Below are positions 7,622-49,911 of a DNA stretch of 64,000 bases, piece by piece. Location of the stretch: contig NC_083412.1 in the NCBI RefSeq assembly GCF_020745735.1, forward strand, positions 59,548,320 to 59,612,319. The letters are read 5' to 3'. The translations under genes and the position numbers were made by a program. The DNA is from Hemiscyllium ocellatum (lineage: Eukaryota). Positions within the stretch are counted from its first letter, which is position 1; every line of letters starts with the position of its first letter. The notes beneath the pieces are model-generated. The model saw nothing but the letters and a program-made list of their open reading frames with translations. It was not told where the DNA came from and did no database searches.

Positions 7622-8485
7622 ATGAGTAAAGGGAAGGGAACAGGCGGCTCTAAGAAAGCAGGGACCCCTCCCCCACCCTCTCCCTCTTCAGCTGCAACAA
7701 AGGTGTCTTCAGCTACTTCAGGAGATTTACCAATGAAGATGAGCTTTGAGGAGATGTTTGCCAGGTGGGAGGCGAAGATTGATGCTTTTATCGATGAGTC
7801 TCGGCAGAGCAGAGAAGCACTATCAGCCGAGCTGCAGAAGCAGGGCAGAGACATTCAGGAATTGGAGTGCCGAGTCAGAGAGGTGGAGTCGAAGGCCGCA
7901 GCCTCAGAGACTGGGATAAAATCAACAGCTGACCACATCCGTTTTCTCGAGAATCGAGTCCAGAACCTAGAAAACCACATTGATGACCTCGAAAATCGAT
8001 GTCGTAGAAAAAATATTCGGTTGGTGGGCCTGCCCGAGCAGGAAGAGGGAGGTCAGCTGACAGCATTCTTAGAGCATTGGCTGCCACAACTTTTAAATCT
8101 GCATAATGGATCAGGCCAGGTAAGGATAGAATGGGCCTACCGGGTCACAGTACGTGGGCCCGGCTCAACCCAGCGCCCACGCCCGGTCCTGTTCCAGCTG
8201 CAGAGCTATAGGGAGAGGCAGATGCTCCTGGAAGCCTCAAGAAATCTGGGAAAAGATCCCCAAGCTATGACCCACAAAGGATCCAGGATCATGCTGTTCC
8301 AGGACTTCTCCCCAGCTTTGGTCCGAAAGAGGAAGGCATTCGATGAGGCGAAGAAGCGTTTAAGGGACTTAAATATCCAGTACTCCTTACGATATCCAGC
8401 GACGCTACGCCTTAGCCACGAAGGATCCATATATAACTTCGGATCACCGGAGAAGGCTAAGGAATTCTTGGACTCTCTTAAATAA
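7622..8485 (+). CDS. L1 ORF1 protein (coiled coil, RRM, CTD), intact, 287 aa
   Basis: Heptad-rich segment followed by RRKNIRLVGLPE, AYR, PRP and FQDFS motifs typical of L1 ORF1p. Confidence 0.9.
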   Translation: MSKGKGTGGSKKAGTPPPPSPSSAATKVSSATSGDLPMKMSFEEMFARWEAKIDAFIDESRQSREALSAELQKQGRDIQELECRVREVESKAAASETGIKSTADHIRFLENRVQNLENHIDDLENRCRRKNIRLVGLPEQEEGGQLTAFLEHWLPQLLNLHNGSGQVRIEWAYRVTVRGPGSTQRPRPVLFQLQSYRERQMLLEASRNLGKDPQAMTHKGSRIMLFQDFSPALVRKRKAFDEAKKRLRDLNIQYSLRYPATLRLSHEGSIYNFGSPEKAKEFLDSLK

Positions 8486-9105
8486 ACTGTAAGAGATTGT
8501 GGACGCTGGTCTGCCTTTCCCATTATTTTGGTTTACATCCCTTCATCTTTTCTTATCTTTCCCCCTATGTGTGTATGTATATATATATGTTGGGGCGTTT
8601 GGTTAATGTTGATGGGGAGAGGTGGTTACCTTATTCTATTTTACTTCTGTTTTTAGGAGCGGGGTTGTTTTTCTTTCCCCTGTTATTTTGTGGTATTATA
8701 TTTAAGTATTACATGTTGAGATTGTAATCTTATAGTTATATATGGTATTAATATTCCCAAATATATTTAGATGTGGGTGTGGGTGGGGGTGGGGTGTTCA
8801 CTGTTAACTCTAGCTTTATATTATATTTGAATTCTCCTCATTTTATTGAGGAACACCTGGGTCAAGGGTGGGGCACTGGTTGGAAGAGGGTAAGATGGAC
8901 TGTGGGAGAGGAAGTGACGCTCCCTGGGAACAAGGGAGAAAATCTCCAATTCGGAATGTTTTATATTTTTTATACTTAGAAAGAGTTTTTTGTTATATTG
9001 TTTTGAGTGTATCAGAGAGTCTTTACTTTTGTAAATCTTGTATGCTCCATGCTCGGGATGTTCTAGATAGGGTTTCCCCTCCCGAGGGGTCTCGGATCTG
9101 TCCAG

Positions 9106-12100
9106 ATGATTATGGCTGAACAGTCGGTTAAGTGGTGCACCTGGAATGTCAGGGGGAGTAATTCGCCAGTTAAAAGGAAGAAAATATTATCAAATCTTAA
9201 GAAGGAGAGAGTTGATATAGATCTCCTACAGGAGACACACCTGTCGGATAAAGAACACTTAAAATTACGACAGGGCGGATTTGATCAGGCCTTTTTTTCC
9301 TCTTTAATTCAAAAAGCAGGGGAGTCGTTATCCTTGTCCGGAAGAACTTCCCTTTGAAAATTCTAAATCAGATAAAAGACGAATCTGGACGATATATTTT
9401 GATTAAAGCCCTCATAAATGGAGAGGAATATGGGATCTTAAATGTATACTGCCCCCCGGCACACCCCTTTAAATTCATAACGGAAGCTTTTTCAAAACTG
9501 ATGGCCTTTGGTGCCCGTCATACAATTATAGGGGGAGACTTTAATTGTATTATGGATCCGGAAATAGACAGGATTCCCAAGAGTGCCGCTGGAGTATCTC
9601 CCAGATCTAGACAACTGGCGGACCTGAATAAAGAATTAGGATTGGTAGATGTATGGAGATGTCTCCATCCACAGGGTAGAGATTTTTCTTTCTACTCTAA
9701 TCCACATAAATGTCACACAAGAATTGATATGTTTTTTGCCCCATCGATTTTTCTAAACTCTATAGCAACCTGTAAAATAGGTACTATAGCAATCTCTGAC
9801 CATGCCGCTGTATACATGGAAACTAAGGTAAAGAACAATGGGACATCTGCTCGGCATTGGCGTATGGACCCCTTCCTGATAAAAGATAGCAAATTTTTAA
9901 AGTACTTCTCCCAAGAACTTAAAACCTTTTTAGAAATTAATACTGGTACGGCTAGCAATCCGTCAATGATGTGGGAGACCATCAAAGCTTATGCACGAGG
10001 TTTGATCATCTCCTATTCAGCGACCCAGAGGAAAATGAAGGGAGAGCAACAGCGTCTGCTCGAAGCTCGCCTAAAAGCAGCCGAAACAGCATACGCTGAT
10101 AGACCTTCTATCACAAAATTGCAGAGGATTACAGCTCTTAGGACAGCTTTAAACACCGCGCTTACTCAAACGGCTAAAAGGGAAATATTATTTGCGAAAC
10201 AAAGATTATATGAATATGGCGACAAACCGGGTAGATACTTAGCATTTCTTGCAAAGAAAAAGAAAGCCCCTCAAACTATTCCGACCATCAAGGAAAGTAC
10301 AGGTACCCTGACTCATGATCATAAAAAGATCAATGCGACCTTTAAAGAATTTTATTCTGAACTATATAGATCGCAGGATTGTGAAGATAGGATTAGGAGG
10401 ATGCAGTCATTTTTTAAAAATTTGACCTTCCCGGGCCTGACTCCGGAACAGGTGTCGGCCCTAAATACCCCTTTAACAGTCCAAGAAATACTTGAGGCAA
10501 TTAGGCAACTTCAGAGCGGAAAAACACCGGGCCCGGATGGTTTTCAAGCTGAATTCTATAAAGAATTTACAGGAATATTGGTTGACCCACTTATGGATAT
10601 GTATAATTTTGTGCATAGTCAGGTCTGTCTCCCGCCCACGCTGAAAGAAGCAAATATTTCTCTTATCCTCAAAAAAGGAAAAGACCCAGAAGATTGTGCA
10701 TCTTACAGACCAATATCCTTACTAAATGTAGACTTTAAAATTCTCTCAAAAATGTTAGCACTAAGACTAGAAAGGGTACTGCCATATATTATAAAGGAGG
10801 ACCAGACGGGATTTATTAAGGGCCGCAGATCATCCAATAATATCAGAAGGGTCTTGAATATGATCCAAGCCTGTCATCAGGGAAAGATACCAGGAGTAGT
10901 AATTTCATTGGATGCGGAAAAGGCATTTGATAGGGTTGAATGGTCATATTTATTTTACACATTGGAAAGGTTTGGCGTTGGACAGGTGTTTACCAAATGG
11001 GTTTCAACATTGTATAATGACCCCAAAGCAGCTGTTATTACTAATGGGTTAAGATCGGATGGCTTCAGTGTGGGTAGGGGCTGCCGTCAAGGATGTCCTC
11101 TCTCACCATTGTTGTTTACACTGATAATCGAACCATTAGCAGAAGCCATCCGGACTGATCCTAATATAACGGCCCCGAGGATTGGTACAGGTAAACACAA
11201 AATTACCCTCTATGCAGATGACGTTCTCTTATTCCTCAGTAATCCTTTAATGTCAGTGCCTCATCTAATTCAAGTTATTAATACATTTAGTGCATTTGCA
11301 GGCTATAAAATTAATTTTTCAAAATCGGAAGCCATGCCAATGGGTGGTCTGGCTATGATACCCCACTTAATGGACGGATCCCCTTTTCCCTTCCGTTGGT
11401 CCCTGGAGGGCTTCTTATATTTAGGTATTTTTATCACGCCAGTATTTGATCAGCTGTATAGGGCTAATTTTGTACAATTAATGGAAAGGATAAGGCAGGA
11501 CCTCCAGCGATGGAGAGACCTTCCGATTTCCTGGCTAGGGAGAATAGCATTAATTAAAATGAATGTTCCGCCCCGTCTCTTATATCCTATGAGAATGCTC
11601 CTGCTGATGCTGCCAAGGCTAGCCCTACGTAAATTATATGGCTGGTTGGGCTCCTTTATTTGGAACCATAGACGGCCCCTTATTAAGCTGAAGAAGCTAC
11701 AGCTTCCACAGGCAAGGGGAGGACTGGACTTCCCAGACTTTAGGAAATATCAGTTAAGCTCCCTACTAAGTTACATAGCTGATTGGGTTTCATCTGATCC
11801 ACAATCAATTTGGCTGGATATCGAAGCCTCCCAAGTAAAATACCCACTTATTAACCTTTTATTTTCAGATAAGAGGAAAATCATTACAGACCGCTGTAAA
11901 AATCCCATAATATTAAACACAATTAAGGCCTGGAATATAATGCGGCAAAATGAGGGTAACTCACATAAAACATCCCCCCATGCACCAATAGTAGGCGCAT
12001 GGGGATTCCAACCGGGGATTACAGATGCCACCTTTAAACTCTGGAGATCCAGGGGCATCTCATGCTTAGGGGACCTATTTAAAGATGGGATCCTGATGTC

Positions 12101-12917
12101 CTTTGAGCAGCTGCGTCTGAAATTCGGAATACCTAATGGGGATCTCTTTCGATACTTCCAAGTTCGAGATTATATACAGAGGAAGACTACATTAATAGAT
12201 AGTCTTTATAAATCAGACAGAGAACGTAATGTCTTACGACCAGCGGGGGCATCCTCCGTTAGTACTATATACCATTTGCTACATGATGGAGTCTCAGGAG
12301 ACATGGATGACCTGCTTAAAACATGGGAGCAGGACTTGGGGCTAGAAATCTCTGAGGATATGTGGAATGACATTTGGGAAAATGCTAGAAGAATTGCTAT
12401 CTGTAACAGAACTCAGGCTATCCAACTAAAGATACTTCATAGGGCCCATATAGCTCCGGCTCGACTGGCAAAATTTAAGGCAGGAGCATCTCCAATGTGT
12501 CCCAAATGCAAAATAGAGGTGGGTACTCTTGCACATTGTCTGTGGACTTGTCAGAAAATCCACAGATACTGGACTAAAGTGGCAAATACCCTGACAGAAA
12601 TTTTAGGAATGGAAATTAGGGTGGACCCTGTATCTCTCCTTTTGGGCTTTTCGAACCTCTCATCTCTGGATATGCATGGGAAGAGACTATTTTCTATTCT
12701 CTCTTTCTGTGCAAGGAAAAATATTTTGGTGAACTGGGTGGCTGAGGGCCCCCCTGGACTTTCAAATTGGCTCAGATTAATTATGGAATATATCCCCCTT
12801 GACTTCCTCACAAATATGGTGCACCGAAAGACTGAATTATTTTATAAAATATGGCAGCCCTTTTTGAATTATATAAATGCAGATATTTCGGCTATCCTAA
12901 CAAGGGCTTTTATTTAG
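9106..12917 (+). CDS. L1 ORF2 (APE endonuclease, reverse transcriptase, CCHC) split by one 1-bp deletion near 9303-9305
   Basis: EN motifs WNVRG, LQETH, GGDFN, RIDMF, SDH; RT motifs GRGCRQGCPLSP and LYADD; CPKC..HCLWTC knuckle. Adding one T at tcttt restores FSSFNSKSRGVVILVRK and joins ORFs 9106-9357 and 9354-12917. Confidence 0.9.
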
Positions 12918-18330: not shown

Positions 18331-19386
18331 TATTCCCAATGTCAAGATAGGCCTCAGTGGGTTTCTCATGTGATCCTGCCACAAATCTCGCCACAGGCCA
18401 CATTGTTCACGACCCTAAAAGATTCCAGCACAGTTGCTTTCCTTGTTCATAAAGGTCACAAATGGCCTGTAGAGAGCATGTTTTAGATCTCTAACTTACA
18501 TTAACATCTCATGCGAAAGACCAGAGAAATAATTTAGCAAGTGCAGTTTTATCAAGTTGCTAAGTTCACGAGCTTACCATCTATAGTTAATATAAAAATG
18601 AGTTGTTGTATATCAATAAAAAAAATGCATGAATGGAAATGGGGTAAAGGTTGGTGATTAGAAAAATTGAGGAGTTGAAAGGTTTAGGTTGACAAAACAT
18701 TAAAAGCAACCTTGAGTGCATAAGTGCAAAGCTAATGGATTCTTGCCAGAAAACAGTAAGCATAGATTATAAAATATAATGCTGAAGCTCTCTATGAAAT
18801 TATAGAAAGGCCACAACTGGCATGCTTTGTTGTTCTATACATACAAACATAAAAGGCAAGCAAGGATGGATAAAAACTCTTGGCCTGACCAGTAGTGCCC
18901 ATACGCAACAAACAAATAGTTTTGGAATTTGCAATCAACTAAAAGAACACATAATAATACAGCTTACTGTATTACATCAAAATATTAGGAAACTGTATTC
19001 ATTAATGGAAAAAAACAAATCTAGCAATCATCATAATATACCTAAACCACTTAAATGTTTAAAATTTCAGTTTAAGAAAACAATTAGTGTTAACGTCCAA
19101 CTTGCGACACTGGAGCCACTCTAAAGTTACATTTGTTTATGCATTTGCAGTTGCAAAACCATTCTTTGCCCAAATCACATATTTGAAAGTTGCTGGCAAG
19201 GTCAGCAATTTGTTGGCATCCTTAACTGCCCTTGAGAAAGCGAATAATCTGAAATGATATGAAACGTTTATTTCTTAAAGACGCACATGTGGTTCCTTTG
19301 TAGTTAGCAGTTTGCCTTATGTTTGATGTGGGGCAAATGCTGGCAACTGAGTAATCTCTGTAGAATCGATTATTTTTATCTATGAC

Positions 19387-19531
19387 CTTTACAACAGTAG
19401 ATTCTATTGTCTGGTCCTGCTCTGGTCTTTTCAATTCCTGTTTTTGTTTACTCTTTGGAAGAGTTTTGACATGAACAGATGCATAATGAAGAGTTTCACT
19501 GCTGAGAGAAATATTATCCTGTAACATATGT
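19387..19531 (-). CDS. Candidate cytoplasmic exon with ITIM (LHYASV)
   Basis: Strong acceptor tcttatttctctttctcag. Open frame HMLQDNISLSSETLHYASVHVKTLPK...ESTVVK; ITIM codons at 19474-19491. Possible donor AAG|gtcata, or read-through to the stop at 19222. Confidence 0.45.
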
Positions 19532-24255: not shown

Positions 24256-24318
24256 TTGTTACACATTTTGATTTTTCCATAATTTGGTCATCAACATCTT
24301 TGCCATGAACTGATGAAT
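24256..24318 (-). CDS. Candidate 63-nt phase 1-1 exon (DSSVHGKDVDDQIMEKSKCVT)
   Basis: Acceptor atattgatatatttatag, donor gtagat. Only the phase-1 frame is open, and it fits the upstream exon ending at 24589. Confidence 0.3.
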
Positions 24319-24664: not shown

Positions 24665-26089
24665 CCAAGGAGCCTGGCTTTGGTTTCCCCTAACCGTTTG
24701 GAATGTACACATTCTGTACTTGACACATTGTCACTAGAAAGATGACCCATTGTTCTGATATAGATTCTCCATCAGCCTTAGCTTCATTTTTCTGGAAAGA
24801 TCCCAATTCATTTCAATGAAGGTAGTCCTCTTTCACGTTAGACTTTTTCTTACTCTTTTAAATCTTGCAGTTTGAGGATCAAATATAGTCAAATTTTGAT
24901 CTAACATTATTCATTTGATACTTGGATGATTAAACGTCCCAAAGTCACCACAATTAGTTCTCGCATATTGAATGAAAGTCGGCAGAAAATTTCCAAGAAT
25001 GTGAGTATACCTTTCCACTTCCTCAACTCAATGCAAATAGATTCTGTCCTGTTCCTTTAAGGAAACCCTCTGTCTCCAAGACTAAGATGTCTTCCTGACC
25101 CAGTGCCATTGCCTTGCCTCCCTTTCATATATTTTTGAACATTCTTTCTCCTTGAATATTTTGTAGCCAATCCTCACAGTTTATAAACCATGTTTGTCAT
25201 TGCCAATACATCAAATTCTCACACAGCTTGTGCTTGTAGCTCATCAACATTATTGACTTGTCTTTTTAAGTGTGTGCATTCAAAATGCCACTGTATTCCT
25301 TGTAGTCCTTCTTAGTCAACTCCTATTCAGTATGGGAGCACTTCCTCTCTGGTCCTATGCATCATTCTCAGTGAATGTACATTATGTTGTTTTGCCACTT
25401 CTGCATCCTGCTGCCCATTTCCCTGTGAGTTTAATTTAAATCTTCCACAGCCACTGTCATGTGTTTCTCTGAGAACATTTATCCAGGTACTGGTGAGGTG
25501 TGAGCTGCACCTTATTGAAATGAATCTTGTATTTACCCTGTGGCAGATGTTAGACCAATGGGCCTGTACTGTTTTATTTTCTTTTTCCTTCCTTTCTTGC
25601 CAGAGAAGCTTTGTTGACTATTTTTCCAATCTGTTAAGACCTTTCCAGAATCCAGCAAACTCTACAAATTAGAATCAATACATCAATTACTTCATCAGCT
25701 ACTCATTTACAGACCATACCATTCATCACTTCTCATCTTTCAGTTCCAATCATTTTCTCAGTACCTTTTTCCTCATGAACATAATTTCATTTCAACAATT
25801 GCATAATTGTTTTAAGTACCTCCCTCTCTTTCAGTTCCTGGTTTTTAAGATGCTGTTTGTGTCTTCTGCATTGATTACTTACATAAAATGTTATTTCACA
25901 CTTCCAATCATTCTTTAGTTCCCACTAATTCCTCATTCTCAACCTCCCAGTGGAACAATGCTTGCTTTCCTCTTTTCCTTTTCAAATGCTGATAGAAATC
26001 TTACAATTTGTTTCTATTTTTCTACTTAGCTTTCTCTCATATTCTAATTTCTCCCATATATTTTAGTCACTGTTTGTTTTAGAATTTTA

Positions 26090-30470: not shown

Positions 30471-31043
30471 TTGGCTCCACTGCTCCAGTTATACAACTCA
30501 TCACTTGTAATAGTCTTAATGCTGACCAACAGTTTGAGAGTGGCCCAAGCACCAATGACTCCTGTATTTTCAGTTTTTTCCTACTCTTTCAGATGCCTAA
30601 CTATCTGTAATCCTGAACTCTTACTGCCTGTGGAATATGAATTTTTCTAATGGTTATTTTTATTAGAATTATGTCATGCAGCATTTATACACTGTTTTCA
30701 ATGCAATGCATTTAGTTCAGCCACAAAAGAAGATTGCATTCTATTCCAAATACTTTTTCCATTCTTCAGTTTATGGCATTCATTCCTAATGATCCAAAGA
30801 CAAAATGATACAATAAGGAGAAGACTCATTAGACCAAAGTATTAATAATTGGAAAAATCTTCAAATTGCAATTGGAACATCAATCAAACCATTAGTAATA
30901 ATTGATTATACATGATCAAGAATTGATACATTACATTCAATAATTTAAAATTCAGATCTTCAGATATATTCTTTAAACTGCATATTAAATCTGAAATATA
31001 TTTACTCACTGTCACTGGAATTTTTAATTGACTTGTGTGAAAT

Positions 31044-40363: not shown

Positions 40364-40560
40364 ACCAATAAATACAGCTTTAGCAATGTGTCGGTTTTAA
40401 TGGAATTGAGGTTACTTTTCTTGTTAGAAAAATGTGCACATCACTCTCCTGTTATTCCATCTCCAATACTGCGTGTTTTATAATGGAATTGTTAATTTTC
40501 CAGCCCCCTTGGCTATAACTGGGAGTCCTGTGGTGTGGTCAGTATTAGTGAGGCACCTAT

Positions 40561-40856
40561 CTGGACTGGCTCTGAGCCTTGTCCTCACTGACCCAGTGAA
40601 GGTGCTGTGCTGAATGTGACAGGAGACGGCGGCTCCCTGCTCCCGCTGGGGCTTTGCAATCCGCAGCCGGGAGCTCAGGTTGTAACTGCTGTCCGTGTTT
40701 ACTGTCAGCGAGCCCGGCTCCTCCTGGTAGGAGACATCCCCCTCAACAATCCAGGAAATGGTCAGATCCCTCGGGAAAAATCCCGCAGCCAAACAAGTCA
40801 GTGTCTGAATCCCAACGCCTTCATCCTGGGGATCCGCTGTCAGATTTCAGGTTTCG
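40561..40856 (-). CDS. Ig C1-set domain exon with frameshift
   Basis: Acceptor gttttatttag, then AKPEI (TGA at 40840-40842), shifting to TADPQDEGVGIQTLTCLAAGFFPRDLTISW..NTDSSYNLSSRL..SCHIQH..VRTRLRASP. C1 hallmarks are LxCLAxGFxP, W, NxDxSY...S.L and CxxxH. 296 nt plus 1 gives 99 codons. Confidence 0.85.
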
Positions 40857-41254
40857 CTAAATAAACACATCAAAACAACACACATTGTGTCAATCTTCAT
40901 TGTAGCAAATAGAAATCGGCAGGTAGCAAGGAGAGGGATGGTTAAAACAGCCTAAAACTTGGATACTCAATGGGACAGTGCAGAATGGGTTTAATAACTT
41001 GTACCCCGATTACCAAATCACCGACACCAGGAGACAGACCCCTCCTCACAATGTGGGTCAGAATGAGAACCGGGGGTCTCAATCCGTTTCGTCCCGACAC
41101 GCGGTCGAGTTGTGGTTTTTTTGGAGCAGGATGTTCAAGAAAATGAGAAAAGTAAACTTTTTCACAAAATCACTTTCGATATTTGCAATTGGCTTGTTGG
41201 AAATCGGATCTTTCGCTGTTATAGTTCGGATTAGAGAGTTTTGTCATAGAATCA

Positions 41255-42290
41255 TAGATTCTACAAGATGATCAGAGGATTAGATAGGGTAGACAGTGAA
41301 AGTCTTCTTCCTAGGATGATGATGATGTCAGCATGTAGGAGGGGGCATAACTACAAATGGAGAGGTGACAGATTTAAGACATATGTCTGAGGCAGGTTCT
41401 TTACTCAGAGAGTGGTAAGGGTGTGGAATGCCTTACCTGCTAATGTAGTCAACTCAGGCACATTAGGGAGATTTAAACAATCCTTAGATAAGCACATGGG
41501 TGACTTTGGGATAGTGTAGGGGGACGAGCTGAGAATAGTTCACAGGTCGGCGCAACACTGAGGGCTGAAGAGCCTGTTCTGCGTTGTATTGTTCTATGTT
41601 CTATGGAGTCACAGGTAGATAGAGTAGTGAAGAAGACATTTGGTATGCTTTCCTTTATTGGCCAGAGCATTGAGTCTACCAGTTGGGAGGTCATGTTGCG
41701 GCTGTAAGGACATTAGTTAGTTCACTTTTGGAAAATTACGTGCAATGCTGATCTCCTTCCTATTGGAAGGATATTGTGAAACTTGAAAGGGTTCAGAAAA
41801 AATTTACAAGTATGCTGCCAGGGTTAGAGGGTTTGAGTGGTAAGGAGAGGTTGAATAGGCTGAGGCTATTTTCCCTGGAGCGTCAGAGGCTGAGGGGTGA
41901 CCTTACAGAGGTTTATAAAATCATGAGTGGCATGGATAGGATAAATAGACAAGGTTTTTTTCCCTTGGGTGGGGGAGTCCAAAACTAGAGGGCATAGTTT
42001 AGGCTGAGAGGGTAAAGAACATAAAAGAGACCTAAGGGGCAACATTTTCATGCAGAGGGTGGTGCGTATGTGGAATGGGCTGCCAGAGGAAGTGGTGGAG
42101 TCTGGTACAATTCAACACTTAAAAGGCATCTGGATGGGTATATGAATAGGAAGGGTTTGGAGGGATATGGGCTAAGTGCTGGCAAATGGGACTTGATTAG
42201 GTTAGGATATCTGGTCATCATTAGCGAGTTGGATCGAAGGGTCTATTTCTATGATGTACATCTCAATGGCTCTGTGACTCATCATTGAGT
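41255..42290 (+). mobile_element. Two CR1 3' fragments in the V-C1 intron
   Basis: ORF KLERVQKKFTSMLPGLEGLS..LERQRLRGDLTEVYKIM, and a second CR1 tail at 41255-41590. Confidence 0.8.
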
Positions 42291-44700
42291 TGTACAGCAT
42301 GAAAATAAACCCTTCCATCCAACTCGTCCATGCTGACTAGATATCCTACATTTAGTCCAGTCCCACTTACAAGCACCTGGCCCATATCCCTTTAAATCCT
42401 TCCTATTCATATACCCATCCAGATACCTTTTAAATGTTATAATCATCCCAGCATCCACCAAATCCTCTGTGTGATAACATTGCCCCTTACGGTTCTTTTA
42501 AGTCCTTGTCCTCTCACCCTAATTCTATGCCCTCTAGTTCTGGACCCCCCCACTCCCACCCCAGGGAAAATACCTTGTCTATTTACCCTATCCATGCCCT
42601 TTGTGATTTTAGAAACCTCTATAAGGTCACCCCTCAGCCTCCAACACTCCAGGGAACATAGCTCCAGCCTATTCAGCCTCTCCCTGTAGCTCAATTCCTC
42701 CCACCCTGGCAAGGTCCTTGTAAATCTTTTCTGAATCCTTTCAAGTTTCACAACATCCTTCCGATAGGAAGGAGACCAGAATTGCATGCAATATTCCAAC
42801 AGTTGCCTAACCAATGTTCTGTATAGTCGCAATATGACCTCCCAACTCATATACTCAATGCCCTGACCAATAAAGGAAAGCATACCAAACACCTTCTTCA
42901 ATATCCTATCTACCTGCACTCTACGCTCAAGGAAAAATTAATCTGTACTCCAATGTTTTTTTGTTTAGCAACACTTCCCAGGACCATATATTGTGTTTAA
43001 GTCCTGCCCTGATTTGCATTTCCAAAATGCAGCACCTCACATTTACCTAACTTAAACTCCATCTGCCACTTCTCAGCCCATTGGCCCAGTTGATAAAGAT
43101 CCTGTTGTAATCTGAGGTAACCTTCTTCGCTGTCCACTACACCACCAATTTTGGAGTCATCTACAAACTTGCTAACCATGCCTCCTTTGTTCACATCCAA
43201 GTTGTTTACATAAATGATGAAAAGAAGTGGACCCAGCATGGATCTTGTGGCACTCCACTGGTCACAGGCTTCCAGTCTGAAAAACAACCCTCCACTGTTT
43301 CCTATCTTCGAGCCAGTTCTGTATCATAATGGCTAGTTCTCCCTGTATTCCATGAGATCTAACCTTGCTAAGCAATCTCCCATGAGGAACTTTGTCAAAC
43401 GCCTTACTGAAGTCCATATTTATCATGTCCACTGCTCTATTCTCATCAATCCTCTTTGTTACTTCTTCAAAAAAACTCAATTAAGTTAGTGAGATATGAT
43501 TTCACACATACAAAGCCATGTTAACTATCCCCAATCAGTCCTTGCCTTTCCAAATACATGTAAATTCTGTCCCTCAGGATTCCCTTCAACAATTTGCCCA
43601 TGACCAATGACATCCTCACTGGCCTATAGTTCCCTGGCTTTTCCTTAGCACCTTTCTTAAACTATGGCACCAGGTTAGATTAGATTAGATTACTTAAAGT
43701 GTGGAAACAGGCCCTTCAGCCCAACAAGTCCACACCGACCCGCCGAAGCAGAACCCACCCATACCCTTATATTTGCCCCTTACCTAACACTACGGGCAAT
43801 TTAACATGGCCAATTCACCTGACCTGCACATCTTTGGACTGTGGGAGGAAACTGGAGCACCTGGAGGAAACCCCCACAGACACGGGGAGAACGTGCAAAC
43901 TCCACACAGTCAGTCGCCTGAGGTGGGAATTGAACCCGAGTCTCTGGCGCTGTGGGGCAGCAGTGCTAACCACTGTGCCACTGTGCCGCCCACAGTTTGC
44001 TTATGTCCAGTCTTCCTGCACCTCACCTGTGACTATCAATAATACAGATATATCAAAAAGGTGCCCAGCAATCACTTCCATAGCTTCCCACATAGTTCAA
44101 TAGTATACCTGATCAGGTCCTGGGGATTTATCCACGTTTATGCATTTTAAGACATCCAGCACCTCATCCTCTGTAATCTGGACATTTTTCAAGATGTCGC
44201 CATCTATTTCCCTGCATTCTATATCTTCCACATCCTTTTCCACAGTAAATACTGATGCTAAATACTCATTTAGTATATACCCCATCTCCTGCAGCTCCAC
44301 ACATAGTCTGCCTTGCTGATGTTTGAGGGGCCATATTCTCTCCCTAGTTACCCTTTTGTCCTTAACGTATTTATAAAATCCCTTTGCATTCTCCTTAACC
44401 CTATTTGCCAATGCTATCTCATGTCCCCTTTTTGCCTTCCTGATTTCCCTCTGAAGTATATTTCTTCTGCCTCTGTACTTTTCTGAGAATTCACTTGATC
44501 GCTGCTGTCTATACCTGACGTATGCTTTCTTCTTCTTCTTGACCAAAACCTCAATTTCTTTAGTCATCCAGCATTCCTTACACCTATCAGCCTTGCCTTT
44601 TACCCTAGCAAGAACAATTTGTCTCTGGACTCTCCTTATCTCATTTCTGAAGGCTTCCCATTTTCCAGCCGTCACTTTACCTGTGACCATCCGCACTCTA
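42290..44700 (-). mobile_element. CR1 LINE fragment (about 2.4 kb) in the V-C1 intron, interrupted by a SINE
   Basis: Minus ORFs with DFSKAFDKVPHGRLL, LGPLLFIIYVNNLD, FVDDSK, LVRQLLEYCMQFWSP and KSPGPD. Confidence 0.9.
43675..43991 (-). mobile_element. HE1-like SINE, full length
   Basis: ttagattagattagattac tail through ...cactgtgccgccc. Confidence 0.9.
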
Positions 44701-45084
44701 TCAACTTTTAAAAGTTTTGGACGAATACCATCAAAAAGGGCCTCCCTCCAAAATTAGAACATCAACTTTTACATCTTGTCTATGCTTTTCCATCACTATT
44801 TTAAGACTAATAGAACTATGAGCGGCTTTCTTCAAACTAAGTGTTGAAAAGGATGGGACTGAAAGGATCCGATCGAAAAGCAGGTGTTGCTGGTGGGTGG
44901 TTACTGTGAGATTCCAGGTAACCCCCGGGCAGACCCTGTGCTCCCACACAACATCCCAGTGTGGGCTCTGTCTCTGTGATTCTGGGCACTGTTTCTGTTT
45001 CCTTCTCTCACACATTGAGTTATTTCACTCTCCCTTCATCTTCTCAGAGAAAGCTCACTGCACAGAACCAGGCCATTTGGCCCA

Positions 45085-45290
45085 TCGTGGCGAAAGGGAG
45101 GACTGCAGATGCTGGAGGTCAGAGTCAAGGTTAGAGTGGTGCTGGAAAAACACATCAGGTCAGGCTGGAGGTTCAGTGAGCCTGACGTGAAGGGCTGCTG
45201 AAGGGCTTTTGTCCCAAACGTCGATTCTCCTGCTCCTCGGATGCTGCCTGACTTGCTGTGCTTTTCCAGCACCACTCTCACCTTGACATT
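45085..45290. mobile_element. Penelope-type fold-back fragment
   Basis: agagtggtgctggaaaaacac... and ...gtgcttttccagcaccactct are inverted arms. Confidence 0.7.
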
Positions 45291-45738
45291 TGGCCCATCG
45301 TGTCCCTGCTGGTTCGACAGCCGCCTTATTCGGAAACTCTGAGAAATGTTTCTCTTCAGAATGTTTTGAACTTCATGATGAAATCTGTCTCTGTCCCAGT
45401 CCGGGGGAGTGCGGGTAAAACCGAGCCCATATGTGGACTCTGTTTCGGATGATCTTCAGTGTGAACCTGTACCGCTTGGTTTGGGACATGGGGATAGACT
45501 CTCCCTGTCTATTCTGTCCAGACACTGAATCAGCAACAAAACCTCGCGGATTCTGGGAACACTCAGCAGGTCAGGCTGTCTCTGGGGCACGGCTCAGATA
45601 AACCACTTTGATAAACTGTTCAACTATTAAACCTCCAACTTCTTCCAGTTCTGACCAACCTGACCCATGACCTGTTTCTCTCTCTCTCTCTCCAGATGCA
45701 GCCCTTCCTGCTGACTATTTTGGATCTTCCACAATTAC

Positions 45739-46080
45739 CTTGAATGTTCAATGTCATTCCATTTCCCTGGAAGTATTTCCAGGGCCGAGGTTTCTGTCTG
45801 AGAACCACACAGCGGTAAGTGTCAGAATCATTCACCATCAGCTCCCGGATAATGAGGAAACTCTCTGACACTGACACTGACATACGAGGGCTGTTTTCCA
45901 GGAAGTTCCTGGATCCTTTGCCGCTGAAGTCAGGATTGTCTCTTGCCCGACACCAATAATATCTCACCCGCTCCGCCCGCTCCTCTCCCGGTACCAGGCT
46001 GCAGTTAATCCGAGCGGTCTGCCCTCTCAGGAGAGAGAGAGCTGGAGGAGACTCAATCACTTCCAGAGGGACAACAGGCC
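45739..46080 (-). CDS. Ig V-set domain exon with built-in J-like G strand
   Basis: Acceptor ttatgttccag, donor CAAG|gtaatt; 342 nt, phase 1-1. Encodes LEVIESP..G.TARINC, W, DSDTYRC and FQGNGMTLNIQ (GxG motif) in one exon with no RSS. Confidence 0.9.
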
Positions 46081-46175
46081 CTGGAACATAATGTGACAAC
46101 AAATGGGAACATCATCTCCACAGAACCCGAGTCTAACTGCAATGACTGCTCCCTGGAATCAAAGGCAATCCTTAC

Positions 46176-46212
46176 CCAAGAGGAAGAGCCAGAGCCTGAG
46201 AGCTGAGCCCAT
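46176..46212 (-). CDS. Leader exon MGSALRLWLFLL(G)
   Basis: ATG in gaacATGG context (A at -3, G at +4), hydrophobic core, phase-1 donor TTGG|gtaagg, 95-bp intron to the V exon. Confidence 0.85.
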
Positions 46213-46240: not shown

Positions 46241-46330
46241 CTACTTGGAGCTGTTGGTCATTGTGCAGGAAATGCCGGTCACAGCGACCTTGGTGCGGGG
46301 GGTGGACCGCTCACTGACTCACATCACACT
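46241..46330 (-). promoter_or_regulatory. Putative proximal promoter / 5' UTR of the V-C1 gene
   Basis: AP-1 consensus TGACTCA at 46315-46321, ETS-core CAGGAAAT near 46266-46273, uORF MTNSSK* at 46241-46261. No TATA box or Ig octamer seen nearby. Confidence 0.3.
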
Positions 46331-47290: not shown

Positions 47291-47899
47291 GAATTCCACA
47301 ACTATTAGTAAGGTGAATGGTTTGAGCTTTGAGAAGGAAATTCCAGAGGTAAATGAGGGCAAAGGGAATAAGTGTGGGAAACTGTTTCCTGTAAAAGGTC
47401 ATAATGTTGGTCAACTGCAAAGAAATTAAAGACCTCGAGGAAGAAGGTGTGGGGGGAATGTTAATCCTCAGGTTTCCTGCCTCCATATGCAATGCCTGTG
47501 GGTAGAGGTAGATGCCAATGGCAAGGGGACACCAGACCTCCAGTATAGTGTTGCAATTGTGATCGACTGTGTCACTTTGCCTGGGATTGTAGATCACCTT
47601 GACGGTACTGACAAGGACAGACACAAGGACAGGAATCAGCCCAGGGGTACAGAAGGGAAGCAGAGGACATTGCTTCACTTTATCCACCAGTACCGGATGC
47701 AAATCCAAAAGCATGACTGTGCCAGGCCTCTCCAGTGTGGGGGTGTAATGCCACACTGTAGGCAGTGTAGGCAGCTTCAGGGCTCCTGTGCCCAGGGATT
47801 GTCCACTATGTCAGCTTTTTTCTCAGTTTTTAAAATCTTGTTTTCAAGTTTTTTTTCTCTTTTATCGATTTTTGGCAGAGGCAATATGAAAGCAGCTTT

Positions 47900-48685
47900 G
47901 TTGAGATCCAGAGCATGGCTGTGGCTGGTGAGCCTGGAGCAGGATCGGGAAGATGGCAGCGAGGTGGTTGGTGAGTCAGGTGCCGGATCTGGAAGATGGC
48001 AGCGAGATGGTTGGTGAGTCTGGTGCGGGATCTGGAAGATGGAAATGAGGTGGTTGGTGAGTCTGGTGCGGGATCTGGAAGATGGCAGCGAGGTGGTTGG
48101 TGAGTCTGGTGCGGGATCTGGAAGATGGCAATGAGGTGGTTGGTGAGTCTGGTGCCAGATCTGGAAGATGGCAGTGAGGTGGTTGGTGAGTCTGGTGCGG
48201 GATCTGGTTGATGGTAATGAGGTAGTTGGTGAGTCTGGTGTGGGATCTGGAAGATGGCTGTGAGGTGGTTGGTGAATCTGGTGCGGGATCTGGAAGATGG
48301 CAGTGAGGTGGTTGGTGAATCTGGTGCGGGATTGGAAAGATGGCAATGAGGTGGTTGGTGAATCTGGTGCGGGATCTGGAAGATGGCAGCGAGGTGGTTG
48401 GTGAGTCTGGGGCAAGATCTGGAAGATGGCAGTGAGGCGTTGGTGAATCTGGTGTGGGATCTGAAAGATGGCAGTGAGGTGTTTGTGAATCTGGTGTGGG
48501 ATATGGAAGATGGCAACAAGGTGGTTGGTGAATCTGGTGCGGGATCTGGAAGATGGCAGTGAGGTGTTGGTGAATATGGTGCGGGATCTGGAAGGTGGCA
48601 GAGAGGTGTTTGGTGAATCTGGTGCGGGATTGGAAAGATGGCAGCGAGGTGGTTGGTGAGTCTGATGGGGGATCAAGAAGATGGC
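47900..48685. repeat. 43-bp minisatellite, about 17-18 copies
   Basis: Unit gagtctggtgcgggatctggaagatggcagcgaggtggttggt. The minus-strand ORFs repeat with a 43-aa period (3 units). Confidence 0.95.
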
Positions 48686-49911
48686 AAAACAGATTTGAAT
48701 TAAGCCAATCAATTTTCTTAGTCACTGTGGTAATCCATGGGAAATGCAAAATTGAAAAGAAATGCATTCAACCAATATGCTGTTGTCCCCTCCCTAAAGA
48801 TGAGAAATTGCTTTGATCTTTTTTGTTGAGTTTTGTAGAAATCATATTGGTAGCTTTGCTACCAAAGCATTTCCATTATCACATCTTTGGAAGGAGAATA
48901 TTCCCTGATAGTAGACTGAACAACACAGGCTGTTTCAGATTAAATCAGGCTTTAGCTACAGCTCCACAACTACAAGAATAGGGAACTGGGACGAGTGTCT
49001 TATGCTTCTAGGCTTTTAACACAAATACAGTAAGGATTCACACTGTATGAAAGACATCTTCTTGCAATACTTTGGGAAGTGCAGCATTTTTCTGACATAA
49101 TTTGGCTTAATTCATTGATTATCCTTACAGAACATACTCCTATTCAATTGTTGTTAAGATAGGTGCATTACAAATGGTACTGTTGGTCAAATCAGACAGT
49201 GGGTTGGATGGACCTTAATGATTCAAGATCCAGATATCACAGTAAGATTGACCAAATTGCTAACTTTCTTAGCTGGTAATTTAAGTTACAGTGGTGAATT
49301 GCATGAGTGTCAAATTTGGGCAAGAAGTGATCCTAAGGGATCATTTGTTACAAAACAAAAGAGGACTCATAAATTCAACAAGATTGGAATATATGTCTGA
49401 CATACCTGAACAGAGAGATGCCACCAAACAGCTTTTGAATATTTTTGTTCATGGATCCTGTATGGTGGAGAATGCCATTAGAAAGTGTTACGACACAGGT
49501 AAACATTTCTGCTTAATTTCAAACCAGCAACACAGAAAAGATTTATCCCATGCAGTAATCTGTAAAAATTCAAGTGGCCAAGAACAATTAAGGGTAAAAA
49601 TTAATAAGTTTATTTTTTAAAGTATAACAGAGAATAATTAACTAACAGCTATATGCCAGTCCTTACTCTAAGCTATCTTTTACATTCCCTTCTCTAATAG
49701 TAGTTCGATAAAACCCTCGATTATGATTTACAGAACAAAACGTCTTATCTCAAAACCCCTGCAGCTTTCATTCTTATCGGTATTTCGGTCCTCTTTTCTT
49801 CTTCTTCATGATCGTGCTTCCCAGGTTATTGATTGATAAAGGTACCTTTAAGAGAGCTATTTTCTGGGCAGTATGCAGATGTTGTTGACTTTGCAGTTCT
49901 CCTCTCAACTC

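What the first reader, a model, noticed from the sequence alone, without database searches (positions are those of the whole stretch)
40478..46212. Non-rearranging, germline-joined VJ-C1 antigen-receptor-like gene
Seen in the sequence: a leader exon, a 95-bp intron (Ig/TCR V-gene-like layout), one 342-nt exon with a whole V domain including a J-like FQGNGMTLNIQ strand and no RSS, and a C1-set exon. Established: C1-set domains are largely confined to Ig, TCR, MHC, tapasin, SIRP, B7-H6-type and a few non-rearranging VJ-C1 genes such as shark UrIg and PRARP, which are discussed as relatives of the pre-RAG receptor. The V lacks light-chain marks (WYQQ, LLIY, RFSGS), so it is not an ordinary joined IgL. 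Inference: a member of a poorly described shark VJ-C1 family. This is the best candidate for a new system in the window.
Basis: partly seen in the sequence, partly recalled or inferred. Interest (0 to 1): 0.82.

Follow-up and report, generated by a model that had tools for sequence, protein, structure and literature searches.

The report
Dead copy of shark VJ-C1 receptor
The exons are real, but this is a decayed extra copy of an epaulette-shark inhibitory surface receptor with an antibody-like V plus C1 outer part; an intact copy lies 22 kb away and is already in RefSeq, so this locus itself is ordinary.

Summary
On the minus strand there is a split leader, a 95-bp intron, a 342-nt single-exon V domain with a J-like strand and no RSS, and a C1-set exon.

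The gene does not stop at 40478. Homology to intact relatives puts its TM exon at 30858-30754, a cytoplasmic exon at 24318-24260 and an ITIM tail exon at 19518-19222, about 27 kb in all.

The genome is Hemiscyllium ocellatum. The same chromosome carries two intact-looking paralogues, both modelled in RefSeq as "SIRP-alpha-like". Copy B has the full V-C1-TM-ITIM/ITSM structure. The scan already followed it up as s1-200204.

The window copy is a multi-hit pseudogene:
- a 4-bp deletion and TGA in the C1 exon
- two lost splice donors
- a TAA in the TM exon
- two signalling tyrosines lost
- a 1-nt deletion in the tail
- a change at the invariant Thr of the J motif

The family occurs in sharks, rays, paddlefish and sturgeon under inconsistent automatic names, and I found no paper describing it. 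It is not on the MHC class I chromosome, and two 20p13 (SIRP-region) marker genes map to another chromosome. It lies between a TTF2-like and a MAN1A-like gene. No RNA evidence could be obtained.

The parts
46176..46212 (-). Leader exon (MGSALRLWLFLL + first base of the next codon), phase 1
   Evidence: Identical to the leader of RefSeq models P0044 and P0050.
46081..46175 (-). 95-bp leader intron (GT...AG)
45739..46080 (-). Single-exon VJ-type V domain, 342 nt, open. The invariant Thr of the family's GxGT J motif is Met here (GNGMTLNIQ).
   Evidence: Pfam V-set E 6e-8. 92-94% aa identity to paralogues. 61% identity to the Scyliorhinus orthologue. The Thr is invariant in alignments A5 and A7.
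40857..45738 (-). V-C1 intron, 4882 nt. Relative to copy B it is enlarged by about 3.6 kb of transposon sequence (about 41216-44823).
   Evidence: The copy B intron is about 1.3 kb. BLAST blocks stop at 41215 and resume at 44824. RT-like and SINE-like ORFs lie in between.
40561..40856 (-). C1-set exon, 296 nt instead of 300. A 4-bp deletion (one ATCT unit) after codon 5 gives an in-frame TGA at 40842-40840. The splice donor is GT->AT at 40560-40559.
   Evidence: Pfam C1-set E 4e-13. Three-copy alignment A1: A and B read AKPEIYLTADPQ... and CCAG|GTAGGT, C reads AKPEI* and CCAG|ATAGGT.
30754..30858 (-). Transmembrane exon relic, 105 nt, phase 1-1, with nonsense TAA at 30844-30842 (FSNY*YFGLMSLLLIVSFCLWII...)
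   Evidence: Aligns to the copy B exon that encodes GFSKYYYLGLLSLILIVPFCLWIIKSQCYKQKNGK of P0044.
24260..24318 (-). Cytoplasmic exon relic, 59 nt (DSSVHGKDVDDQIMEKSKCV). Donor GTAAGT is mutated to ACAAGT at 24259-24258.
   Evidence: tblastn with orthologues. Alignment A6 against the copy B exon.
19222..19518 (-). Tail exon relic. The ITIM LHYASV is kept. The ITSM TEYAVL has become IESTVV (TCT at 19401-19399). TTYASL has become TTCASL (TGT at 19287-19285). A 1-nt deletion moves the stop to 19224-19222.
   Evidence: tblastn to P0001 and P0004 tails.

Best explanation
The finding is the 5' third of a pseudogene of about 27 kb (window 46212 to about 19222, minus strand; G000:C16:59,567,541-59,594,531). 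It is one of three clustered paralogues in Hemiscyllium ocellatum of a non-rearranging receptor family built as leader, VJ-type V domain, one C1 domain, uncharged TM, and a cytoplasmic tail with one ITIM and two ITSM-like motifs. By inference from those motifs, the intact protein is an inhibitory surface receptor: ligand binding at the V domain would lead to tyrosine phosphorylation and recruitment of SHP-1/SHP-2-type phosphatases. The ligand is unknown. The window copy (C) is the tail-to-tail inverted duplicate of the intact copy B and has been disabled several times over. The B/C duplication is old, since the 3' halves are only about 70-80% identical. The promoter-leader-V-intron-C1 module is about 94-98% identical among all three copies, so it was probably homogenised later by gene conversion or re-duplication. 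The C1 deletion and donor mutation would then have arisen after that. Shown here: exon structure, lesions, paralogy, orthologues, chromosomal position. Inferred: inhibitory signalling, conversion history, lack of function.
For: V-set and C1-set domains. Three copies on C16. The 4-bp deletion and donor GT->AT are seen only in copy C. Collinear inverted homology runs from B to C between window 46471 and 19036, with identity falling from 97.7% to about 70-80%. TM exon with TAA. Cytoplasmic exon with donor GT->AC. Tail with two Tyr lost and a 1-nt deletion. RefSeq P0044 (362 aa) reproduces exactly the five coding parts that I mapped in copy B. P0044 and P0050 sit on a contig of 103,478,965 bp, the length of C16. 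No protein model matching copy C was returned. Orthologues at 45-79% identity occur in 12 elasmobranch genera, with relatives in Polyodon and Acipenser. ITIM and ITSM motifs are conserved in alignment A5. The J-motif Thr is invariant in the family but is Met here.
Against: The leader and V exon are still open with intact splice sites. I could not confirm the lesions in independent reads, so they rest on one assembly. dN/dS among the three V exons is about 1 but rests on only 8-14 differences. The conversion scenario rests on an identity gradient and a modest mosaic of shared differences.
Confidence: 0.88

Rival explanations
1. Copy C is a living gene that now makes a short secreted product. 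This would be leader plus V domain plus AKPEI, or V plus a frameshifted C1 read into the intron. It could act as a soluble decoy for the ligand of the membrane receptor.
For: The leader, its intron and the V exon are intact and open. The promoter region is 97-99% identical to the expressed-looking paralogues. With the C1 donor dead, the premature stop could lie in a terminal exon and escape nonsense-mediated decay (inference). Copy A's RefSeq model P0050 also ends just after C1.
Against: The invariant Thr of the GxGT strand is replaced. V-exon substitutions look neutral. The downstream exons decayed independently, as expected of a gene that simply died. No AATAAA occurs in the 180 nt after the C1 exon. 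No protein model for it was returned by the database searches.
Confidence: 0.07
2. The lesions are assembly or consensus errors, or a null allele of the sequenced individual. In the species, copy C would then be a third working receptor gene.
For: The region is a recent inverted duplication, where assemblers can mis-polish. The 4-bp deletion lies in a short ATCT tandem.
Against: There are at least seven independent lesions of different kinds (indels, substitutions at splice sites, a nonsense codon, Tyr codons) spread over 27 kb. Most lie in the 3' half, which is only 70-80% identical to copy B, so mis-assembly between copies is unlikely there.
Confidence: 0.03

Closest known systems
RefSeq models 'tyrosine-protein phosphatase non-receptor type substrate 1-like' of Hemiscyllium ocellatum (P0044 = copy B, P0050 = copy A) and their elasmobranch orthologues (e.g. 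XP_038658211.1 Scyliorhinus canicula, XP_051870356.1 Pristis pectinata)
   Same: Same exon plan, identical leader, 92-94% identical V, 98-100% identical C1, and homologous TM, cytoplasmic and tail exons.
   Different: The window copy carries a frameshift, a nonsense codon, two dead donors and lost signalling tyrosines. No protein model for it was returned.
SIRP-alpha / SIRP family (mammals; PDB 2wng)
   Same: It works like a SIRP. Both have a non-rearranging VJ-like V domain followed by C1-set domain(s), a TM, and a tail with several ITIM-type tyrosines. The two-domain model superposes on SIRP-alpha at TM 0.52 and 24% identity. This resemblance is why RefSeq names it so.
   Different: It has one C1 domain instead of two (batoids have a lineage-specific duplicate). 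The V profile matches V-kappa, TCR V-alpha and VNAR better than SIRP V, which is absent from the top 60. VPS16 and a Nop-domain gene, which flank SIRPs on human 20p13 (my own knowledge), are on C7, not C16.
UrIg / UrIg2 (Flajnik et al. 2023; PMC12227049; PDB 9dmx)
   Same: Non-rearranging, split leader, single-exon VJ domain followed by a C1-type domain, found in elasmobranchs. UrIg2 gave the highest summed PDB score for the C1 exon.
   Different: Nurse-shark UrIg2 has nine C1-type domains, and its N-terminal domains form disulfide-linked homodimers. UrIg is MHC-linked and UrIg2 is linked to the Ig/TCR complex. This family has one C1 and an ITIM tail. It lies on C16, whereas all MHC class I hits are on C113 and most C1-exon hits outside this family are on C9. 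The UrIg2 score is a sum over three domains, each only 17-27 bits.
B7-H6 / B7 family (PDB 3pv7)
   Same: V plus C1-type ectodomain on a TM anchor. It gave the best whole-model superposition (TM 0.60). The sturgeon and paddlefish relatives are auto-named NCR3LG1-like. The cluster lies between a TTF2-like and a MAN1A-like gene; in human, from my own knowledge, B7-H4 (VTCN1) lies between TTF2 and MAN1A2.
   Different: Only 16% identity. As I recall, B7 V domains lack the GxGT J-like strand. B7 tails have no ITIM/ITSM array. The relation was not tested by phylogeny.
PRARP (Fu et al. 2019, J Immunol 202:1992, cited in PMC10751288)
   Same: Non-rearranging VJ gene. An ITIM tail and paired genes are as I recall them from the abstract, not checked here.
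   Different: Could not be compared: the paper and its sequences are not held.

Membership tests
Elasmobranch/chondrostean VJ-C1-TM-ITIM/ITSM receptor family (RefSeq 'SIRP-alpha-like' LOCs) | Split leader and one-exon V domain with a J-like GxGT strand; no RSS | tested here: met
   The J-motif Thr is mutated to Met in this copy.
Elasmobranch/chondrostean VJ-C1-TM-ITIM/ITSM receptor family (RefSeq 'SIRP-alpha-like' LOCs) | Single 300-nt phase 1-1 C1-set exon beginning AKPE | tested here: met
   The homologous exon is present (98-100% aa identity to paralogues) but frameshifted, with a dead donor.
Elasmobranch/chondrostean VJ-C1-TM-ITIM/ITSM receptor family (RefSeq 'SIRP-alpha-like' LOCs) | Uncharged TM exon (..YYY..LILIVP.CLWII..) and a tail with ITIM LHYASV plus ITSM-like TEYAVL and TTYASL | tested here: met
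   Homologous exons are found at 30858-30754, 24318-24260 and 19518-19222. They are present only as relics: a TAA in the TM exon and two of three motifs lost.
Elasmobranch/chondrostean VJ-C1-TM-ITIM/ITSM receptor family (RefSeq 'SIRP-alpha-like' LOCs) | Intact open reading frame (a working member) | tested here: not met
   At least seven lesions.
SIRP family proper | V domain closest to SIRP V domains | tested here: not met
   The profile of 12 family V domains against PDB returned V-kappa, TCR V-alpha and VNAR in the top 60 and no SIRP. The single-sequence search gave the same.
SIRP family proper | Conserved synteny with the SIRP region (human 20p13 neighbours such as VPS16 and NOP56) | tested here: not met
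   Vps16_N hits occur only on C7:87.68 Mb. Nop-domain hits are on C7:113.07 Mb and C1. The locus is on C16:59.4-59.6 Mb. Only two markers were tested.
SIRP family proper | V-C1-C1 ectodomain | tested here: not met
   Shark members have one C1. Two nearly identical C1 domains in Hypanus and Mobula look like a lineage-specific duplication.
UrIg / UrIg2 | VJ followed by several C1-type domains; linkage to the MHC (UrIg) or the Ig/TCR complex (UrIg2) | tested here: not met
   One C1 domain. All 82 MHC class I hits are on C113. Most C1-exon hits outside this family lie on C9. UrIg features are from PMC12227049.
Germline-joined immunoglobulin light chain | V close to IgL V genes; C exon followed by a stop, with no TM or cytoplasmic exons | tested here: not met
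   The V matched only its two paralogues and one 32% hit in the whole genome at E <= 1e-3. TM and ITIM exons are present.
PRARP | Sequence relationship to chicken PRARP1/2 | not testable with these tools
   No PRARP sequence or paper could be retrieved.

The most novel reading that the evidence does not exclude
The dead copy is not inert. Its promoter-V-C1 module is kept 94-98% identical to the two live paralogues by ongoing gene conversion, while its 3' half has drifted to 70-80%. The cluster would then shuffle variation in a germline-joined VJ domain through a pseudogene donor, as chicken pseudo-V genes do. This would occur in a receptor family that is an undescribed non-rearranging VJ-C1 lineage in a TTF2-MAN1A interval, the human counterpart of which (1p12-p13) I recall being counted among MHC-paralogous regions.
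Probability: 0.07. Interest if true: 0.65.

Novelty: new member of a known kind. Interest (0 to 1): 0.27.

Why it matters
This locus matters little on its own. It is a pseudogene, and the scan already followed up the intact copy B next door (s1-200204).

The family is of moderate interest:
- It is a conserved, non-rearranging VJ-C1 receptor of cartilaginous fish and chondrosteans with an inhibitory tail.
- Automatic annotation names it at least seven different ways: SIRP-alpha-like, SIRP-beta-like, Ig kappa-like, Ig heavy chain Mem5-like, TCR beta-like, B7-H6-like and tapasin-related.
- I could find no paper that describes it.
- It lies away from the MHC class I chromosome and from the chromosome carrying the 20p13 (SIRP-region) markers.

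The family therefore belongs in discussions of which VJ-C1 genes predate RAG. The pseudogene is useful as a neutral comparator for the live copies, and as a warning that the V and C1 exons alone give a misleading 'secreted antibody-like' gene model.

Tried and rejected
- RNA evidence.
Copy B has neither an acceptor nor a donor there. P0044 and all orthologues go straight from ...EKSECA to DNISL... with no such segment. The real TM exon is at 30858-30754.
- The conspicuous 91-96% B/C block at 25007-25654 is a retroelement fragment, not an exon.
- A hydrophobicity scan alone gave several false TM candidates. tblastx of B against C was too noisy because of repeats.
- Literature: searches for PRARP, for SIRP with cartilaginous fish, and for signal regulatory protein with shark returned nothing relevant. 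The UrIg 2023 and PRARP 2019 papers are not held.
- The look-up of encoding contigs found no record for P0044 and no neighbouring genes within 10 kb of the Pristis orthologue.
- The ESM Atlas gave only generic V-set neighbours.
- Foldseek against PDB could not discriminate among Fab chains, SIRP-alpha and B7-H6 (model pLDDT 74.8, pTM 0.59).
Full report
**1. What is in the sequence**

The feature lies on the minus strand.
- The leader exon runs from the ATG at 46212 to 46176. It is 37 nt, ends in phase 1 and is followed by GTAAGG.
- The intron 46175-46081 is exactly 95 nt.
- The next exon, 46080-45739, is exactly 342 nt and open. It ends in ...YFQGNGMTLNIQ before a G|GTAATT donor.
- Pfam scores this exon as V-set over the full domain (E 6e-8).
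- No RSS heptamer occurs in or beside the V exon.
- The exon at 40856-40561 scores as C1-set (E 4e-13).

**2. Three copies, and this one is broken**

A six-frame search of the window's own genome (3.98 Gb, window = C16:59,548,320-59,612,319) found the V exon three times on the same chromosome, at 92-100% amino-acid identity. The C1 exon is also present three times, at 98-100%.
- Copy A is at 59.384-59.387 Mb on the minus strand.
- Copy B is at 59.524-59.545 Mb on the plus strand.
- Copy C is the window copy.

The three C1 exons were aligned with their flanks.
- A and B begin AKPEIYLTADPQ... and end CCAG|GTAGGT, a 300-nt phase 1-1 exon.
- C has lost one ATCT unit, so the reading frame from the V exon hits TGA at 40842-40840.
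- The donor of C is AT instead of GT (40560-40559).

**3. The rest of the gene**

BLAST of the sequence around copy B against the window shows one long collinear inverted homology. It runs from window 46471 down to 19036, so B and C are tail-to-tail duplicates of a unit of about 27 kb.

A phmmer search of the V domain against 1.84 billion representatives returned full-length relatives.
- The best is XP_038658211.1 of Scyliorhinus canicula: 367 aa, 61% identity in V.
- Its layout is leader, V, C1, TM and a tail carrying LHYAPV, TEYAVL and TIYASL.

A word-indexed search with that protein returned two Hemiscyllium ocellatum RefSeq models.
- They sit on a contig of 103,478,965 bp, the length reported for C16. 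This identifies the genome.
- P0044 (362 aa) is copy B.
- P0050 (237 aa, V-C1 plus 11 residues) is copy A.

tblastn of the orthologues onto both copies, followed by base-level alignments, located the remaining exons.
- Copy B: TM exon at 59,530,352-456, cytoplasmic exon at 59,535,923-981, tail exon at 59,544,725-976.
- Copy C: 30858-30754, 24318-24260 and 19518-19222.

Copy C is damaged in each of these exons.
- The TM exon has a TAA at 30844-30842 where B reads TAT.
- The cytoplasmic exon's donor GTAAGT has become ACAAGT.
- In the tail, the ITSM-like TEYAVL reads IESTVV and TTYASL reads TTCASL.
- A 1-nt deletion in the tail shifts the stop.
- Only the ITIM LHYASV survives.

In the V exon, the Thr of the GxGT motif is Met in copy C. 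That Thr is invariant in all 12 family V domains aligned.

With at least seven independent lesions spread over 27 kb, copy C is a pseudogene. Neither database search returned a protein model for it.

Copy B lacks splice sites there, and no orthologue contains such a segment.

**4. History of the cluster**

Identity between B and C falls along the unit.
- 97.7% over promoter, leader, V and the 5' part of the intron (1.65 kb, mostly non-coding).
- 93.5% around C1.
- 90%, 88% and 84% in the next blocks, then about 70-81% through the TM, cytoplasmic and tail regions.

Copy A shares only the 5' module, at 96.7-97.1%, and its homology stops about 45 nt past the C1 donor.

In a three-way comparison, the V-side segment is roughly star-like, with 20 C-unique, 19 A-unique and 8 B-unique sites. 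In the C1-side segment B is the odd one out, with 23 B-unique sites against 7 for A and 7 for C.

I read this as an old B/C duplication whose 5' module was later homogenised or re-copied. The C1 lesions would then be recent and the 3' lesions older. This is inference.

dN/dS among the V exons is about 1, but on only 8-14 differences.

The V-C1 intron of copy C is 4.9 kb against 1.3 kb in B, because of about 3.6 kb of inserted repeats.

**5. What the family is**

Members were found in:
- seven shark genera: Hemiscyllium, Stegostoma, Scyliorhinus, Mustelus, Heptranchias, Heterodontus and Cetorhinus;
- five batoid genera: Pristis, Hypanus, Mobula, Narcine and Hemitrygon;
- more distantly (about 30%), Polyodon and Acipenser.

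The Polyodon protein shares the characteristic ...YYY...VP..IWI... TM and tyrosine motifs. Nothing from teleosts or tetrapods passed E 1e-15, within the limits of a word-indexed search.

Automatic names range over SIRP-alpha-like, SIRP-beta-1-like, Ig kappa-like, Ig heavy chain Mem5-like, TCR beta-like, NCR3LG1-like and tapasin-related. The family is evidently uncharacterised.

By its motifs the intact protein should work as an inhibitory receptor that recruits SH2-domain phosphatases. This follows from established ITIM/ITSM knowledge and was not tested.

**6. Comparison with known families**

- *SIRP.* The architecture and tail are SIRP-like. However, a profile of the family's V domains matches V-kappa, TCR V-alpha and VNAR best, and SIRP does not appear in the top 60. 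VPS16 and a Nop-domain gene map to C7; I take these as 20p13 markers from my own knowledge of the human map.
- *UrIg/UrIg2.* Nurse-shark UrIg2 has nine C1-type domains, its N-terminal domains form homodimers, and the two genes are linked to the MHC or the Ig/TCR complex (PMC12227049). Here there is one C1 and an ITIM tail. All 82 MHC class I hits are on C113. Most C1-exon hits outside this family are on C9.
- *IgL.* Excluded by the TM and ITIM exons, and by the absence of any other close V in the genome.
- *Structure.* An AlphaFold model of the V-C1 ectodomain of copy B (pLDDT 74.8) matches Fab chains, SIRP-alpha (TM 0.52) and B7-H6 (TM 0.60) about equally by E-value. It does not discriminate.

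**7. Neighbourhood**

- A weak GRF zinc-finger hit lies at C16:59.323 Mb (28.3 bits; TTF2 carries such a finger).
- A glycosyl-hydrolase-47 mannosidase gene lies at C16:59.83-59.90 Mb.
- Together they bracket the cluster, as TTF2 and MAN1A2 bracket TRIM45 and VTCN1 on human 1p12-p13 (human map from my own knowledge).

This partly confirms the earlier follow-up of copy B (s1-200204), which placed it in a 'B7/TTF2' neighbourhood. The paralogue identity of the mannosidase was not established.

A second, different VJ-C1-TM family lies 7 Mb away on the same chromosome. It is related to Pristis XP_051870431.1 and Callorhinchus LOC103180135.

**8. Verdict**

The scan has already described the intact neighbour on other DNA (s1-200204).

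The window locus is a newly recognised pseudogene member of a family that is modelled in RefSeq but not described in any paper I could search. Its interest is low to moderate.

Noticed in passing
L027:3185-6421 (G000:C16:59,384,184-59,387,420), minus strand: Copy A has only the leader-V-C1 module. Homology to B and C ends about 45 nt after the C1 donor, and its RefSeq model P0050 ends 11 residues after C1 (ELALVLFLGKD). It may be a naturally truncated or secreted member, or an incomplete model.
   Followed up: partly
L027:6583-9100: An insertion of about 2.5 kb lies just upstream of copy A's start codon. It carries a 615-aa ORF with reverse-transcriptase-like and GIY-YIG-like (YIGETG) motifs, as in Penelope-like retroelements. 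The flanking homology to the window overlaps by about 19 nt (46245-46263), which suggests a target-site duplication.
   Followed up: no
G000:C16:66,621,000-66,791,000 (L030-L033): A second, distinct non-rearranging VJ-C1-TM family has two to three copies 7 Mb from this cluster on the same chromosome (48-61% identity to Pristis 'Ig kappa light chain-like' XP_051870431.1; related to Callorhinchus LOC103180135). In Pristis both families also share one chromosome.
   Followed up: partly
window 7622-12917, plus strand: An apparently intact LINE: a 287-aa ORF1-like frame (7622-8485) and an open 1187-aa ORF2 with endonuclease and reverse-transcriptase motifs (9354-12917). It lies between the 3' ends of copies B and C.
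   Followed up: no
window 47777-48767: A tandem repeat whose units stay open in three frames on the minus strand (repeated ...HQPPHCHLPDPAPDSPTTSLPSSRSRTR...). It looks like a minisatellite, not a gene.
   Followed up: no
G000:C9:6.7-24.3 Mb: More than a hundred near-identical C1-type exons (open frames of 116 aa, about 29-36% identical to the query C1) are spread over 17 Mb of C9 and several small contigs. They are presumably the multi-cluster immunoglobulin loci.
   Followed up: no
P0033, P0042 (Hypanus sabinus, Mobula birostris): Batoid members of the family carry two nearly identical C1 domains in tandem (V-C1-C1), an apparent recent exon duplication. Hemitrygon P0051 has a different TM/tail after C1.
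   Followed up: no
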